In this document: positions 15,181-61,165 of the stretch, piece after piece
Numbering within the stretch: the first letter of the stretch is position 1
Layout: the number at the start of each line of letters is the position of its first letter
Notes under the pieces: generated by a model
Told to the model about the DNA's origin: nothing
The model's database searches: none
Seen by the model: the letters and a program-made list of their open reading frames with translations, nothing else
Made by a program: the position numbers and the translations under genes
From: Octopus sinensis
Taxonomy: Eukaryota
Direction of reading: 5' to 3'
Assembly: GCF_006345805.1 (NCBI RefSeq)
Contig: NC_043025.1
Coordinates: 12,214,001-12,278,000 of the forward strand
DNA length: 64,000 nt

Positions 15181-15336
15181 CGGAAGTGAAGACTGCAGGC
15201 CCCGGCGAAAGAGCCACGGGCGCATGCGCGGACAGAAAGCACTTTGGCGCAATTCAATGAGAGACGGCAAGGGTGGCAGGACCCTGTTTTTCTTCAATTT
15301 AAGGGCAGCGATCGCTCGTCCCGCCTCGGTCGACAG
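15181..15336 (+). promoter_or_regulatory. CpG-rich promoter / non-coding first exon of the ZNF gene
   Basis: ETS-like CGGAAGTG at 15181, NRF1-like GCGCATGCGC at ~15220, strong donor CAG|GTAAGG at 15336/15337. A matching acceptor tttcag at 18075 precedes the ZNF ORF. The 5' boundary is approximate. Confidence 0.65.
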
Positions 15337-15371
15337 GTAAGGCCTCTCTATGGTTAAACTATTATTTCACT

Positions 15372-15816
15372 GGCGATCTTACGGTATAAGTACCGGATAC
15401 ATTTAAAAAAAGTGTGTTTTTTTTTTATATATGGGGGGTTAGGGTTTGTGTTAGGGGTGGGAGAAAAGGGTTTCTCTTATCTTCAGAAATGTAAACTCAC
15501 GTGTGTACATGTACCGAAGGATCGCCACATACCCTAACCCCCCACATATATAAAAGAAACCCTTTTTTGAAACGTATCCCGTACTTGCGGAAGTACAGCG
15601 GTACTTATACCTATTTCTTTACTACCCACAAGGGGCTAAACACAGAGGGGACAAAGGGATTAAGTCGATTACATGGGCCCCAGTGCGTAACTGGTACTTA
15701 ATTTATCGACCCCGAAAGGATGAAAGGCAAAGTCGACCTCGGCGGAATTTGAACTCAGAACGTAACGGCAGACGAAATACCGTTAAGCATTTCGGTACTT
15801 ATACCGTAAGATCGCC
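15372..15816. mobile_element. MITE with perfect 24-bp TIRs and a 4-bp CACT direct flank; carries a SINE insertion with a 13-bp TSD
   Basis: GGCGATCTTACGGTATAAGTACCG at 15372-15395 and its reverse complement at 15793-15816; CACT at 15368-15371 and 15817-15820; CGGTACTTATACC on both sides of the SINE. Confidence 0.75.
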
Positions 15817-16538
15817 CACTTCCGGAAGTAGACGATCGCCATTTCACTTCGATAGTGTTGGTGAATGGGTCGAACTAAAGCCTTTGACCCGGGCACAAAA
15901 AGAAAAAAAAAAAAAAAGGGTCCATGGCCTTTAAACTATAAGTGTTTGACCCTGGCCAGAAAAAAATGGACAAAATAGTGTAATAGGTGTAAAAGTACTT
16001 GTTCTAAACGATTATCAAAAACATACACACACACACACACAAAGAGAAATGGTTGGTTGAAGGCAAGTGTGCATTGAACTGAATTTAAATAAGCAAGAAA
16101 GATATTATCAAAGAAAAGGCCATGGTACCATCTTTAGGATCTGTTGTTGGTGAAGTTATTAATATCAATATGTATGCATATATATATACATACATATATA
16201 TATATCTATGTATGTGTATACGTATATATATATATAAATACATACATACATATATATGTATATATATATATATATAAATATATGTATGTATGTATATATA
16301 TATATATATATACATACATATATATGTATGTATATATATATATAAATGTATATATATAAATACATATATATATATATAAATGCATATATATATTTATATA
16401 TATATATATATACATATATAATTATATATATATATACATGCATGTATATATGTACATACATATATATATATACACACACATATATATATACACACACACA
16501 TACATTCACATATATGTATATATATATATATAAATATA

Positions 16539-16572
<34 letters not shown>

Positions 16573-16617
16573 TATATATTTATATATATATATATACATA
16601 CATGCATGTATATATAG

Positions 16618-16649
<32 letters not shown>

Positions 16650-57064: not shown

Positions 57065-57654
57065 CTGACGAAAAAAAGATGGCCATAAACTGAGGGGTCA
57101 CTCGTAAATAGAGCTGGATAACAAAACCGTTCCCTCTTTAGTGTCCACCCGTAATTATGACCCTAGTATCGATCTATTGCATTTCAATCTGTTTTAGGAT
57201 TAGGGTTAAGGTTAGGGGGATCTTTTCGGTTTGAACGGCTGTTTTTTTTTAAAATTATTTCCACGTAACTAAACACTTTTAAACTTCGTATACTGGTAGA
57301 ATGTGTTTATAAAACATCTTTTCTCTTGGCTTTATTGAGAAAATTCTATAGTTTGTAAGATATTTGTCGTTTTTTTTCTTCAATTTCTGCAATTTCAACC
57401 AATCAATGACGTATATTGAGGTAAAAAAAACACATTCTGTGCCGTATGAATATGACCGTGGCCATTCTGGAGCACCAGCTTTAGTCGAGCAAATCGCCCC
57501 CGGGACTTATTTTTTTGAAAGCCTAGTACTTATTCTATCGGTGTCTTTTGCCAAACCGCTAAGTTACGGGGATGTAAACACACCAGCATCGGTTGTCAAG
57601 CGATGTAGGGGGGGGGGACAAACACAGACACACAAACATATACACACACGCATA

Positions 57655-58500
57655 CATACATATATACGACGGGCTTCCTTCAGTTTCCGTCTACCAAATC
57701 CACTCACAAGGCTTTGGTCGGCCCGAGGCTATAGTGGAAGACACTTGCCCAAGGTGCCACGCAGTGGGACTGAACCCAGAACCGTGTGGTTGGTAAGCAA
57801 GCTACTTACCACACAGCCACTCCTGCATATATATATACGACGGGCTTCTTTCAGTTTCCGTCTACCAAACCACTCACAAGGCTTTGCCCGAGGCTATAGT
57901 GGAAGACACTTGCCCAAGGTGCCACGCAGTGGGATGAACCCAGAACCGTGTGGTTGGTAAGCAACCTACTTACCACACAGCCACTCCTGCATATATATAT
58001 ACGACGGGCTTCTTTCAGTTTCCGTCTACCAAATCCACTCACAAGGCTTTGGCGGCCCGAGGCTATAGTGGAAGACACTTGCCCAAGGTGCCACGCAGTG
58101 GGACTGAACCCAGAACCGTGTGGTTGGTAAGCAAGCTACTTACCACACAGCCACTCCTGCATATATATATACGACGGGCTTCTTTCAGTTTCCGTCTACC
58201 AAATCCACTCACAAGGCTTTGGCCGGCCCGAGGCTATAGTGGAAGACACTTGCCCAAGGTGCCACGCAGTGGGACTGAACCCAGAACCGTGTGGTTGGTA
58301 AGCAAGCTACTTACCACACAGCCACTCCTGCATATATATATACGACGGGCTTCTTTCAGTTTCCGTCTACCAAATCCACTCACAAGGCTTTGGCCGGCCC
58401 GAGGCTATAGTGGAAGACACTTGCCCAAGGTGCCACGCAGTGGGACTGAACCCAGAACCGTGTGGTTGGTAAGCAACCTACTTACCACACAGCCACTCCT
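57655..58500 (-). repeat. Tandem array of 5 SINE 5'-halves
   Basis: CGACGGGCTT...CACAGCCACTCCTG units of ~165-180 bp separated by short (TA)n. Confidence 0.85.
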
Positions 58501-58707
58501 GTGCTATTGATATTTTTTAATATTTTTCTCTCTATAAACAAATTTTATTGAATGATGATATCAAACTAACACACACGTAGTCCCAACTGAGCAAGGGCCG
58601 TGTTATGTATGTGTAAGAAAAAAACACCTAAAATCATTATCATCATCATCATCGTTAACGTCTGTTTTCCATGCTAGCATGGGTTGGATGATTTGACTGA
58701 GGACTGG

Positions 58708-59490
58708 CATCATCATCATCATCATCATTGTTCGACCGTGGTCGAGACAATGGAATTTACCATGCTACGCCAGACTTCACGGTCCATCATAGCATTGCGG
58801 AGGTCCTGTTGCTGGATGCCTGTATCCCTGGAGATTACATCAGGGTAGGAGAGTGTGCGGCCTCTGGTGTTGCGAGTAGATGGCTTCCAGAGGAGAAGAG
58901 TAGAAATTACTTCTTTTTCAGCTCTACAACAATGTCCAGCAAACTGGACTCTCCTACCCTTCACAAGAGATGACACAGGTGGTAATTTCCCATATATTTG
59001 TACTTTGGTTGGATGGCGCTTCCACAAGAGAACCCTAACCCTAACCATCATCATCATCATCATTGTTCGACCGTGGTCGAGACAATGGAATTTACCATGC
59101 TACGCCAGACTTCACGGTCCATCATAGCATTACGGAGGTCCTGTTGCTGGATGCCTGTATCCCTGGAGATTACATCAGGGTAGGAGAGTGTGCGCCCTCT
59201 GGTGTTGCGAGTAGATGGCTTCCAGAGGAGAAGAGTAGAAATTACTTCTTTTTCAGCTCTACAACAATGTCCAGCAAACTGGACTCTCCTACCTTTCACA
59301 AGAGATGACACAGGTGGTAGTTTCCCATATATTTGCATTTTGGTTGGATGGCGCCTCCACGAGAGATTTTGAGCTCTCATAAGGAGGCGAGTGTAGGTTC
59401 CATCCAACCGCCTCTCAAGCTTCTTTGATAACGTCCAGGTTTCTGAGCCATATAGTAGGATTGGTTCGACTGTGGCTTTGAATATTTCAA
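58708..59490 (-). mobile_element. Two tandem RTE-clade LINE 3' fragments with (GAT)n tails
   Basis: MDGTYTRLLMRAQNLSW...RRVQFAGHCCRA...LLWKP...RGRTLSYPDVI..D...MMDREVWR, repeated twice. Confidence 0.85.
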
Positions 59491-61018
59491 GTTTGAAGTC
59501 TCTACTTAGATTTGAGGACTGGCAAACCAGATGGCTGCACCAGGCTCCAATCTGATCTGGCAGAGATTTTATTCTTTCGGTAAATATTGCGTACCCACAG
59601 ATTTTTCGGGTGCTTTCAACAGATCTGCCCTACAAACCCGTCGCAAGCCCCTTTTTTCTGGAAAAGAAAGGTGGGGACCTCGAAGGGAGTTTTGTTTCAC
59701 GGGTCTTTTCTTCTTATCCAGGTTATTTTGCATGCTTTCAACAAATGTGACATCGAAATCACACGTAAACGGCTCCTCTTACCAGAAAAGGAAAGAATTG
59801 GCTGCTATTTCTAGCATGCCCTGCTATCACGTAACAGCTATTTGTGTTCACACCGAAATATTTACCAACACTTTTTCTTCCGTTTATTTTTTTCCCCTTT
59901 ATGGAACTCAATATTTTCTCTGTTGACATCCACTTCAGTGAGGTCAAGGATTAAGTGAAAACGTATCAATCACTGTTCCCTCTCGACAGGACATTAGAAA
60001 TTTCCCCGCTGTCTTTGCAAGCAACAAGCAGGTGGATTTAGTTTCAAATCCAGGCAGGGCTAAATGAGCTCCTACAAGTTATTTATAATAATAAGTGGCG
60101 ATATATTGGGGTGTGGAGGAGCAATAAAGGGCAACGGGCTACAATCGTGTCCGTCAGGCACAGGTCGACAGAGTGGAGGCGCAATGGCCCAGCGGACTCG
60201 CAGTTGTAGGATCACGGTTTCGATTCCCAGACCGGGCGTTGTGAGTGTTTATTGAGCAAAAACACCTAAAAGCTCCACGAGACTCCGGCAGGGGGTGGTG
60301 ATCCCTGCTGTACTCTTTCACCACTCTTTCTCCCACTCTTTCTTCTGTTGGCCTGCTCGCTTAGCCAGCGGGGTGGCGTCATTCGAAGGCTAAAACAATG
60401 CGAACGCATTGTGACCAGCGATGTGTAACAACATCTGATGGTCTGGTTGGTCACGTGATCACGTGATATCGGGGTTGAAGGAATGATGTGTACAATATTA
60501 AATATGCTTAGACAATCTGAAAACAATACTCTTTACTCTTTTACTTGTTCCATGCCTTTAATTGAGCAACTCGACCCCGGGACTTATTCTTTTTAAGCCC
60601 AGTACTTATTCTATCGGTCTCTTTTGCCGAACCGCTAAGTGACGGGGATGTAAACACACCAGCATCGGTTGTCAAGCAATGCTAGAGGGACAAACACAGG
60701 CACACAAACACACACATATATATATATACATATATACGACAGGCTTCTTTCAGTTTCCGTCTACCAAATCCACTCACAAGGCTTTGGTCAGCCCGGGGCT
60801 ATAGCAGAAGACACTTGCCCAAGATGCCACGCAGTGGGACTGAACCCGGAACCATGTGGTTGGTTAGCAAGCTACTTACCACACAGCCACTCCTGCGCCT
60901 ATAAGAACTTTTAAACATTTTTTTTTTGTTATGAGCCGAAATAGCTTGTAGTGTGATGGAGGAAAAGGACAACAGAAAAAAAGAAGCAAACGGGAGAAAG
61001 AAATACAAAAGGCCTTAC

Positions 61019-61165
61019 CTGTTGACCCCAGCGGGACGAGCGGTCACTCTCACGAATTAAACACGTTTTATCTCTGCGCTGTCTTTTCCGGAACTGACCA
61101 CACGTGCTTCCTGCACACGCATGTCCCTTTCACTCTTCTGCCAGCCCCTGCAGTCTTCACTTCCC
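61019..61165 (-). promoter_or_regulatory. Probable promoter / first non-coding exon of the ankyrin-RING gene, homologous to 15181-15336
   Basis: GGAAGTGAAGACTGCAGG block and CAG|GTAAGG donor shared with the ZNF leader exon. Confidence 0.6.

What the first reader, a model, noticed from the sequence alone, without database searches (positions are those of the whole stretch)
15181..61165. Two unrelated genes share a homologous promoter/leader exon
Seen: the ZNF leader (15182-15344, +) and a segment upstream of the ankyrin-RING gene (61164-61011, -) share an exact 18-mer GGAAGTGAAGACTGCAGG. They also share a donor block, GCGATCGCTCGTCCCGCCTCGGTCGACAG|GTAAGGCC versus GTGACCGCTCGTCCCGCTGGGGTCAACAG|GTAAGGCC (31/37 identical). 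Spacing from 18-mer to donor is similar (155 versus 146 nt) while the middle has diverged. Inference: a portable ETS-type promoter plus first-exon module reused by expanding gene families. It may have been captured from a ZNF paralog to drive an N-terminally truncated MIB gene, or be a dispersed leader-exon cassette. Conservation concentrated at the start motif and the pre-donor block suggests selection.
Basis: partly seen in the sequence, partly recalled or inferred. Interest (0 to 1): 0.8.

Follow-up and report, generated by a model that had tools for sequence, protein, structure and literature searches.

The report
Two decayed retrotransposon LTR copies
The sequence shared upstream of the zinc-finger gene and the ankyrin-RING gene is two independently inserted, decayed copies of the long terminal repeat of an octopus LTR retrotransposon that has at least about 140 copies genome-wide; this is ordinary, and whether either copy drives its neighbouring gene is untested.

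Summary
The exact 18-mer, the 31/37 pre-donor block and the 155 versus 146 nt spacing are all as described. The interpretation needs replacing. Both segments are copies of one ~290-bp long terminal repeat (LTR) of an LTR retrotransposon in a 2.72-Gb genome that matches Octopus sinensis.

- **Family structure:** The repeat has sharp TG...CA ends and 5-bp target-site duplications. A polypurine tract abuts the 3' copies. Direct LTR pairs enclose gag-like, protease, reverse transcriptase, RNase H and integrase remnants.
- **Copy number:** The 18-mer alone occurs 143 times (up to 1 mismatch) on almost every chromosome.
- **The two window copies:** They are no closer to each other than independent decay predicts (identity 0.70 observed, 0.69 expected). 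The 18-mer and donor blocks are not unusually conserved within the family.
- **No link to ZNF genes:** None of 20 sampled copies has a C2H2 gene downstream. The ZNF-side fragment was simply co-duplicated with its ZNF paralogs.

An LTR is by nature a portable promoter, and this one carries an ancestral consensus 5' splice site. Use as promoter plus first exon at these loci therefore stays possible, but no data here support it. Interest is low.

The parts
15114..15353 (+). ZNF-side LTR fragment: roughly the first 80% of the LTR (model positions ~10-232 of 286). It is truncated just after CAG|GTAAGGCC. It contains the 18-mer (15182-15199) and the donor-like site (GT at 15337).
   Evidence: It matches the LTR of the chromosome C7 element at 77% over 15123-15351. 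It is 0.83 identical to the family majority.
60947..61239 (-). ANK-side complete LTR (293 bp). It starts TGTGGTG... at 61239 and ends ...CACACTACA at 60947. It contains the 18-mer (61164-61147) and the donor-like site (GT at 61018).
   Evidence: It is 76-85% identical to other copies.
60918..60946 (-). Remnant of the retroelement's internal leader directly after the LTR (AGCTATTTCGGCTCATAACA plus an A-run). This marks the copy as a 5' LTR whose internal part has been lost.
   Evidence: The same 20-nt sequence plus A-run follows the 5' LTRs of L010, L011 and L013. L011 internal bases 7-94 match 61007-60918 at 91%. No other internal retroelement sequence is in the window.
14914..15062 (.). A ~150-bp palindromic, high-copy MITE-like repeat immediately upstream of the ZNF-side LTR fragment. 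It accounts for much of the local CpG density.
   Evidence: 113 matches among the 40 scored of 1547 first-look candidates, 80-91% identity over query 25-173, and self-complementary hits on both strands.
15373..15892 (.). Nested insertion with inverted repeats (ggcgatcttacggtataagtaccg / cggtacttataccgtaagatcgcc) just downstream of the truncated LTR. It is absent from the paralogous copy on contig C13131.
   Evidence: L034rc 1-300 aligns to window 15073-15372 and 300-515 aligns to 15893-16119. Sequence.
18442..20472 (+). C2H2 zinc-finger ORF (676 aa). It lies 3.1 kb downstream of the LTR fragment on the same strand. An acceptor-like site (tttcag|ATAACC) lies at 18075/18076.
   Evidence: zf-C2H2 E=4.9e-121, 18 matched stretches..
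50219..50593 (-). Ankyrin-repeat exon (bounds of the open frame) of the ANK-RING gene.
   Evidence: repeated G.TPLH.A motifs in the translation.
42479..42871 (-). Open frame containing the RING-type C3HC4 motif of the same gene.
56905..57064 (-). It has an acceptor-like ttcgtcag|GG at 57065/57064 and a donor-like cag|gtaacg at about 56905. It lies about 3.95 kb downstream of the ANK-side LTR.
   Evidence: from sequence only. There is no transcript evidence.
60560..60898 (-). tRNA-derived SINE inserted about 20 nt after the leader remnant. It replaces or interrupts whatever followed the 5' LTR. Its downstream end (60560) is approximate and read by eye.
   Evidence: from sequence (tRNA-like head ggcgcaggagtggctgtgtggtaag...ggttccgggttcagtccc).

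Best explanation
Both segments are copies of the ~290-bp long terminal repeat of one LTR-retrotransposon family of this octopus genome. Each arose by a separate integration. The ANK-side copy is a complete 5' LTR that keeps about 30 nt of the element's leader; the rest of the element is gone. The ZNF-side copy is a 3'-truncated LTR fragment embedded among other repeats. It was later copied along with the whole ZNF gene unit by segmental duplication. Their similarity is shared descent from the family's source sequence followed by independent decay. The 18-mer (with its ETS-like GGAAGTG), the CATGCG motif (an NRF1-like GCGCATGCGC on the ZNF side) and the consensus 5' splice site CAG|GTAAGG are ancestral features of the LTR. 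They were not acquired or preserved at these two loci. Shown here: repeat membership, LTR anatomy, independence of the two copies, and co-duplication with the ZNF. Inferred: that the motifs served the element's own transcription and RNA processing. Unknown: whether either copy now initiates host transcripts.
For: - **Copy number and spread:** A search with the 246-bp segment gave 43 matches among the 40 scored of 161 candidates, on many chromosomes, at 74-80% identity. The 18-mer at up to 1 mismatch has 143 sites (75 forward, 68 reverse); the reversed-pattern control has 0.
- **Sharp ends:** Oriented alignment of 27 copies shows the unit starting TGTGGTG... and ending ...CACAC(T/A)ACA.
- **Target-site duplications:** 5 of 20 copies match at 4 or more of 5 bases, against 2.9% in cross-copy controls (L019 AACCA, L018 AGGTC). 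L005 has TAAGG. The C7 element has GGCAC at both outer ends.
- **Polypurine tract:** Nine copies are preceded by a shared ORF-like flank that ends in GATCGGGGGG directly before the TG start.
- **Internal genes:** A direct LTR pair 3.4 kb apart on C7 has LTRs 96.1% identical. It encloses a gag-like ORF and an aspartyl protease with DTG (Pfam 1.8e-4). It also has reverse transcriptase with YIDD (RVT_1 4e-3) and DUF7047 (5e-13, above cutoff). The integrase matches rve at 3.2e-5 and MMTV integrase in the PDB at 1.6e-8. It has 65 homologues, most carrying PF00665, PF17921 or PF13456.
- **More LTR pairs:** Other same-strand 18-mer pairs lie 2.7-3.9 kb apart.
- **Independence of the two window copies:** Identity to the family majority is 0.82 and 0.83. 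Expected mutual identity is 0.69 and observed is 0.70. They share 3 derived states against 2.3 expected. Their longest exact run is 18 nt, against a median of 28 for other copy pairs.
- **No special conservation:** Per-block conservation is 0.85-0.97. The 18-mer and donor blocks (0.93-0.95) are not exceptional.
- **No ZNF association:** 0 of 20 sampled copies have C2H2 ORFs downstream.
- **Co-duplication:** The ZNF unit (LTR fragment, intron and ZNF ORF) is collinear with two paralogous units at C29:13.85 Mb. The LTR part is no better conserved than its flanks.
Against: - The Pfam hits to protease, RVT_1 and rve in the one element examined are below the curated cutoffs, because that copy is frameshifted. 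Only DUF7047 and the homologue and PDB searches are clearly significant.
- No canonical tRNA primer-binding site (TGG...) follows the 5' LTR.
- Some loci carry tail-to-tail LTR palindromes, which a simple LTR model does not predict.
- The ZNF-side copy keeps 8 of 11 ancestral CpGs and has 17 CpGs despite high non-CpG divergence. This could hint at a hypomethylated, promoter-like state, so function at that locus is not excluded.
Confidence: 0.93

Rival explanations
1. The segments have the same LTR origin, but one or both window copies have been co-opted. Transcription starts in the LTR, the LTR's own CAG|GTAAGG donor splices to the downstream exon (18076 or 57064), and the LTR supplies promoter and non-coding first exon to the host gene. 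This would parallel mammalian MaLR/MTA LTR-initiated transcripts.
For: - Both copies are in sense orientation, 2.7 and 3.95 kb upstream of acceptor-like sites.
- The donor is intact in both copies and in the C29 paralogs.
- The ZNF-side copy retains 8/11 ancestral CpGs. Region 14901-15400 is the most CpG-dense 400-bp stretch of the window, with o/e 1.23 against a median of 0.64.
- The LTR fragment is retained in all the ZNF paralog copies examined.
- Promoter and donor both inside a solo LTR is a known mode of co-option (PMC13408016, citing Franke et al. 2017).
Against: - No transcript data are available.
- The LTR part is no more conserved than the flanking non-coding DNA among ZNF paralogs.
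- Much of the CpG density comes from an adjacent high-copy MITE.
- The ANK-side copy has background CpG o/e (0.62).
- Donor retention in the family (16/27 keep CAGGTAAG) is about what neutral decay at ~0.95 per base predicts.
Confidence: 0.15
2. The segments are a host-gene promoter and leader-exon cassette that spreads with expanding gene families and is not a transposon.
For: ETS-like, NRF1-like and E-box motifs plus a consensus donor are present. Co-duplication with ZNF paralogs is seen.
Against: Target-site duplications, TG..CA ends, a polypurine tract, gag-pol internal regions, at least 143 dispersed copies in both orientations, and 0/20 with a ZNF downstream.
Confidence: 0.02
3. The segments are spliced-leader RNA genes whose leader is trans-spliced onto many mRNAs.
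For: A dispersed repeat ends in a consensus 5' splice site.
Against: - No Rfam family matched anywhere in the window.
- The unit is an LTR bounded by target-site duplications.
- The 'exon' would be about 150 nt, and homology continues about 70 nt beyond the donor to a sharp LTR end.
Confidence: 0.01
4. The segments belong to a foldback or MITE-type DNA transposon with long inverted arms.
For: Several loci carry two copies tail-to-tail (L021/22, L026/28, L027). A first alignment looked palindromic.
Against: That first impression came from mixing orientations, because loci are not flipped to the match strand. Most copies are single units. Direct pairs enclose gag-pol.
Confidence: 0.02

Closest known systems
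Solo and truncated LTRs of LTR retrotransposons or endogenous retrovirus-like elements (pol order PR-RT-RH-IN, as in Ty3/Gypsy, BEL/Pao and retroviruses)
   Same: TG...CA termini, 5-bp target-site duplications, a polypurine tract before the 3' LTR, direct LTR pairs around gag-pol remnants, and a majority of solo copies (19 of 20 sampled).
   Different: - The superfamily was not resolved here.
- The elements seen are short (about 3.4 kb internal) and frameshifted.
- No canonical tRNA primer-binding site was recognised.
- A 10-nt complement between the LTR start and the post-LTR leader, and tail-to-tail LTR dimers, are unusual details.
Mammalian MaLR/MTA LTR-initiated transcripts (promoter and splice donor both inside the LTR; Franke et al. 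2017, as summarised in PMC13408016; see also PMC6102241)
   Same: The LTR carries promoter-type motifs and a consensus 5' splice site within the LTR itself. A solo LTR could therefore in principle supply a promoter plus first exon to a downstream gene. Both window copies are in sense orientation upstream of genes.
   Different: No transcript evidence exists here. The organism is a cephalopod and the LTR family is unrelated. There is no sign of selection on the LTR-derived part at the ZNF paralogs.
Segmentally duplicated C2H2 ZNF clusters of octopus genomes (my own knowledge of the Octopus bimaculoides genome description, Albertin et al. 2015)
   Same: The ZNF unit, including its upstream repeats, is duplicated 1.6 Mb away on the same chromosome as an inverted pair at about 87-90% BLAST identity. 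A more diverged paralog sits on an unplaced contig; its LTR fragment is 89% identical to the window's.
   Different: The shared upstream segment is a hitch-hiking LTR fragment, not a family-wide ZNF leader.

Membership tests
LTR of an LTR retrotransposon | Discrete repeat unit with 5'-TG...CA-3' ends and short terminal inverted repeats | tested here: met
   The unit starts TGTGGTG and ends CAC(T/A)ACA in most of 27 aligned copies. Length is 277-295 bp.
LTR of an LTR retrotransposon | Target-site duplications of 4-6 bp flanking solo LTRs and complete elements | tested here: met
   5-bp duplications: 5 of 20 copies match at 4 or more of 5 bases, against 2.9% in controls. L005 has TAAGG, and the C7 element has GGCAC at both ends. 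Not clear for either window copy: the ANK side is a truncated 5' LTR and the ZNF side is a truncated fragment.
LTR of an LTR retrotransposon | Two LTRs in direct orientation enclosing gag and pol (protease, RT, RNase H, integrase) | tested here: met
   C7:89237239 and 89240896 have LTRs 96.1% identical. Internal ORF fragments include protease with DTG, RT with YIDD, DUF7047 at 5e-13, and integrase (rve 3.2e-5; PDB MMTV integrase 1.6e-8; 65 homologues).
LTR of an LTR retrotransposon | Polypurine tract immediately upstream of the 3' LTR | tested here: met
   GATCGGGGGG(G)n abuts the TG start in 9 copies that share the integrase-side flank.
LTR of an LTR retrotransposon | tRNA primer-binding site just downstream of the 5' LTR | tested here: inconclusive
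   The 20 nt after the 5' LTR (AGCTATTTCGGCCCATAACA) do not begin with TGG and were not matched to a tRNA 3' end. They are complementary to the LTR's own start (TGTTATGGGC). No systematic tRNA comparison was made.
Co-opted LTR promoter / LTR-initiated host transcript | Transcription start inside the LTR and a splice junction from the LTR (or just after it) to a host exon | not testable with these tools
   No RNA data are available. An exact-protein look-up for the ZNF found no record.
Co-opted LTR promoter / LTR-initiated host transcript | Purifying selection on the LTR-derived part relative to neutral flanks | tested here: not met
   Among ZNF paralogs, most 50-nt bins of the LTR part (0.94-1.0) are as conserved as most bins of the flanks (0.92-1.0). 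Family-wide retention of the donor and 18-mer fits neutral decay.
Spliced-leader RNA gene | Short SL RNA gene (leader plus donor plus Sm-site intron) recognisable as an RNA family, usually in tandem arrays | tested here: not met
   No Rfam match in the window. The unit is an LTR with target-site duplications.

The most novel reading that the evidence does not exclude
This octopus LTR family carries, inside the LTR, both promoter motifs (ETS-like, NRF1-like, E-box) and an ancestral consensus 5' splice site. Solo LTRs could therefore act as ready-made 'promoter plus non-coding first exon' units, as MaLR/MTA LTRs do in mouse oocytes. Under this reading the CpG-retaining fragment at 15114-15353 is the working promoter and leader of this ZNF and its duplicated paralogs. 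An LTR would then be wired into the cephalopod ZNF expansion.
Probability: 0.15. Interest if true: 0.5.

Novelty: new member of a known kind. Interest (0 to 1): 0.15.

Why it matters
As it stands, the main value is for annotation. A striking 'shared leader exon' between unrelated genes turns out to be two copies of a dispersed LTR, and should be masked or annotated as such rather than read as regulatory conservation. If transcript data later showed starts and splice junctions from these LTRs, it would be an invertebrate example of LTR-initiated host transcripts with an in-LTR donor. It would also link a retroelement to expression of part of the expanded octopus zinc-finger repertoire. That would be of moderate interest to people who study transposon co-option and cephalopod genomes.

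Tried and rejected
- **Palindrome artefact:** A first MAFFT alignment of 30 loci suggested a ~700-bp palindromic foldback element. This was an artefact, because genome-search loci are not flipped to the match strand. Only a few loci are true tail-to-tail pairs. That call printed a garbled column-majority string before the retroelement nature was known, and it was not used. After that I printed no consensus. ANK and RING exons were found by motif scan instead.\n- **Pfam on minus-strand ORFs:** Eight long minus-strand ORFs between 46 and 60 kb gave nothing.\n- **CpG density as a promoter proxy:** Suggestive for the ZNF side, but confounded by an adjacent high-copy MITE.\n- **Superfamily assignment:** Gypsy versus BEL/Pao versus retrovirus-like was not resolved from the degraded copy examined.

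
Full report
**Observation**

The 18-mer GGAAGTGAAGACTGCAGG is exact at 15182-15199 (+) and 61147-61164 (-). It has no other match in the window at up to 2 mismatches, and none is expected by shuffling. The blocks ending in CAG|GTAAGGCC are 31/37 identical, and the spacings are 155 and 146 nt. Pairwise alignment shows that homology begins about 70-80 nt upstream of the 18-mer. On the ANK side, comparison with other copies shows it continues about 70 nt beyond the 'donor'.

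**What it is**

The window lies at C29:12214001-12278000 of a 2.72-Gb assembly with 13,516 contigs. Protein hits named 'Octopus sinensis' sit on contigs whose lengths equal those of this assembly's C6 and C7.

A search of the genome with the ZNF-side segment returned 43 matches among the 40 scored of 161 candidates. They lie on many chromosomes and both strands, mostly at 74-80% identity. The 18-mer with up to 1 mismatch has 143 sites (75 forward, 68 reverse), against 0 for the reversed control.

An orientation-corrected alignment of 27 copies shows the following.
- **Unit and ends:** The unit is 277-295 bp with sharp ends, TGTGGTG... to ...CACAC(T/A)ACA.
- **Target-site duplications:** Solo copies carry 5-bp duplications (L019 AACCA, L018 AGGTC, L005 TAAGG). 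5 of 20 copies match at 4 or more of 5 bases, against 2.9% in cross-copy controls.
- **Polypurine tract:** Nine copies share an upstream flank ending in GATCGGGGGG directly before the TG start.
- **Leader:** Others share a downstream flank that runs into a gag-like ORF about 45 nt after the repeat.

On C7, two copies in direct orientation lie 3.4 kb apart. They are 96.1% identical and are flanked by the same 5 bases, GGCAC. I examined the internal region in separate pieces only. In order it encodes:
- a gag-like ORF;
- an aspartyl protease (DTG; Pfam gag-asp_proteas 1.8e-4);
- reverse transcriptase (YIDD; RVT_1 4e-3);
- DUF7047 (5e-13, above the curated cutoff);
- an RNase H-like stretch, judged by eye only (Pfam returned no match for it);
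- an integrase (rve 3.2e-5; best PDB match MMTV integrase at 1.6e-8; 65 database homologues, most carrying PF00665, PF17921 or PF13456).

The frames of this copy are broken. Further same-strand 18-mer pairs 2.7-3.9 kb apart are. The repeat is therefore the LTR of an LTR retrotransposon with pol order PR-RT-RH-IN. Most copies are solo: 19 of 20 sampled have no internal sequence 1.5-8 kb downstream.

**The two window copies**

- **ANK side:** This is a complete 293-bp LTR (61239-60947, minus strand). It is followed by about 30 nt of the element's leader (60946-60918), then unrelated sequence and a tRNA-derived SINE. No other internal retroelement sequence is in the window.
- **ZNF side:** This copy (about 15114-15353, plus strand) covers roughly the first 80% of the LTR and breaks off just after GTAAGGCC. 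A ~150-bp high-copy palindromic MITE lies directly upstream (14914-15062; 1547 first-look candidates). A nested inverted-repeat insertion lies just downstream (about 15373-15892) and is absent from a paralogous copy.

**Are they specially related, or under selection?**

Each copy is about 0.82-0.83 identical to the family's majority states. Independent decay predicts a mutual identity of 0.69, and the observed value is 0.70. They share 3 derived states against 2.3 expected. Their longest exact run (18 nt) is shorter than the median for other copy pairs (28 nt).

Across the family, conservation per 10-nt block is 0.85-0.97 beyond the first, ragged block. The 18-mer block (0.93-0.95) and the donor block (0.95) are not exceptional, and the weaker blocks hold most of the 11 ancestral CpGs. 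12 of 27 copies keep the exact 18-mer and 16 of 27 keep CAGGTAAG, roughly as neutral decay predicts. There is no evidence that one copy was captured from the other's locus.

**Relation to gene families**

None of 20 copies sampled from the exact-18-mer list has a frame with two or more C2H2 motifs on either strand 1.5-8 kb downstream.

The only near-identical relatives of the ZNF-side copy (89-94%) belong to paralogous ZNF units. Two units at C29:13.85 Mb are arranged head-to-head, and each is collinear with the window from about 14900-15055 through the acceptor region and the ZNF ORF. One further, more diverged copy sits on contig C13131 and is collinear with the window only across the upstream region. 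Within these paralog alignments, most 50-nt bins of the LTR part (0.94-1.0 identity) are no better conserved than most bins of the flanks (0.92-1.0). So the LTR fragment predates the duplications and was carried along with the gene.

**Could it still act as a promoter and first exon?**

LTRs carry promoters by design. This one also has an ancestral consensus 5' splice site inside it, and both window copies are in sense orientation upstream of acceptor-like sites.

The ZNF-side copy keeps 8 of 11 ancestral CpGs (17 CpGs in all) despite high non-CpG divergence. Region 14901-15400 is the most CpG-dense part of the window, with o/e 1.23 against a median of 0.64. This hint is weakened because much of that density belongs to the adjacent MITE. 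The ANK-side copy has background CpG content (o/e 0.62).

No transcript evidence could be obtained. The closest known analogue is the mouse MaLR/MTA LTR, which supplies both the start site and the donor within the LTR so that solo LTRs can drive host transcripts (PMC13408016, citing Franke et al. 2017; also PMC6102241). I give this reading about 0.15 for at least one of the two loci.

**Mechanism, with status of each step**

- **Shown:** The family is an LTR retrotransposon. The two copies are separate, old insertions. The ZNF-side copy was duplicated with the gene.
- **Inferred:** The GGAAGTG, CATGCG and CACGTG motifs are promoter or enhancer elements of the element's U3. The donor lies in R/U5 and served the element's own RNA processing. 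The U3/R/U5 borders were not determined.
- **Unknown:** Present-day activity at these loci.

**Limits**

- Copy counts are lower bounds, as the tool states.
- The superfamily was not assigned.
- The primer-binding site was not identified.
- The downstream boundary of the ANK-side copy was read by eye and has not been confirmed.

**Verdict**

The segment is a portable, promoter-bearing, dispersed module, but it is a transposon LTR rather than a host leader cassette, and no selection or capture is indicated. This is an ordinary feature, a new member of a known kind, and of low interest.

Noticed in passing
window 14914-15062: A ~150-bp palindromic, CpG-rich, MITE-like repeat with very many copies in the genome (1547 first-look candidates, 80-91% identity). 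It sits directly upstream of the ZNF-side LTR fragment.
   Followed up: partly
window 14741-14919 and G000:C29:13843063-13844202: An AC-rich minisatellite (32/56-nt units) ends at about 14919. The same ~30-nt unit forms a long array next to the paralogous ZNF units at C29:13.843 Mb.
   Followed up: no
window ~15373-15892: A nested insertion with ~24-nt inverted repeats, absent from the paralog on contig C13131. It contains a segment resembling the 184-nt tandem unit at 28602-29245.
   Followed up: partly
window 30100-40852: A 10.7-kb satellite array with a 66-nt unit (132/198-nt higher-order periods) and 91-94% matches. It explains the many long ORFs open on both strands there. A related 67-nt array lies at 41693-42149, next to the RING exon.
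   Followed up: partly
window 21498-22872 and 27322-28319: Two further tandem arrays, one with a 67/134-nt unit (about 10-20 copies) and one with a 123-nt unit (8 copies, 96% matches).
   Followed up: no
window 60560-60898 (-): A tRNA-derived SINE inserted about 20 nt after the leader remnant of the ANK-side LTR.
   Followed up: no
L021/L022 (C2:90694295-90694809), L026/L028 (C13:44634007-44634551), L027 (C6:67935188-67935739): Tail-to-tail pairs of the LTR joined through the 20-nt leader AGCTATTTCGGCCCATAAC. The second arm in the L027 and L028 pairs lacks its last ~45-50 nt. The arms of a pair are 89-91% identical. The same odd structure at several loci suggests either recurrent aberrant reverse transcription or a derivative that transposed as a unit.
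   Followed up: partly
L010, L011, L013 just after the 5' LTR; LTR start in all copies: The leader GCCCATAACA is the exact complement of TGTTATGGGC at the LTR's 5' end. From memory, it also resembles the anticodon-loop region of initiator tRNA-Met in the sense orientation. No canonical TGG primer-binding site is present and gag starts about 45 nt after the LTR, so priming may be unconventional.
   Followed up: no
window 16178-16676: A ~500-bp (AT)n microsatellite in the presumed ZNF first intron.
   Followed up: no
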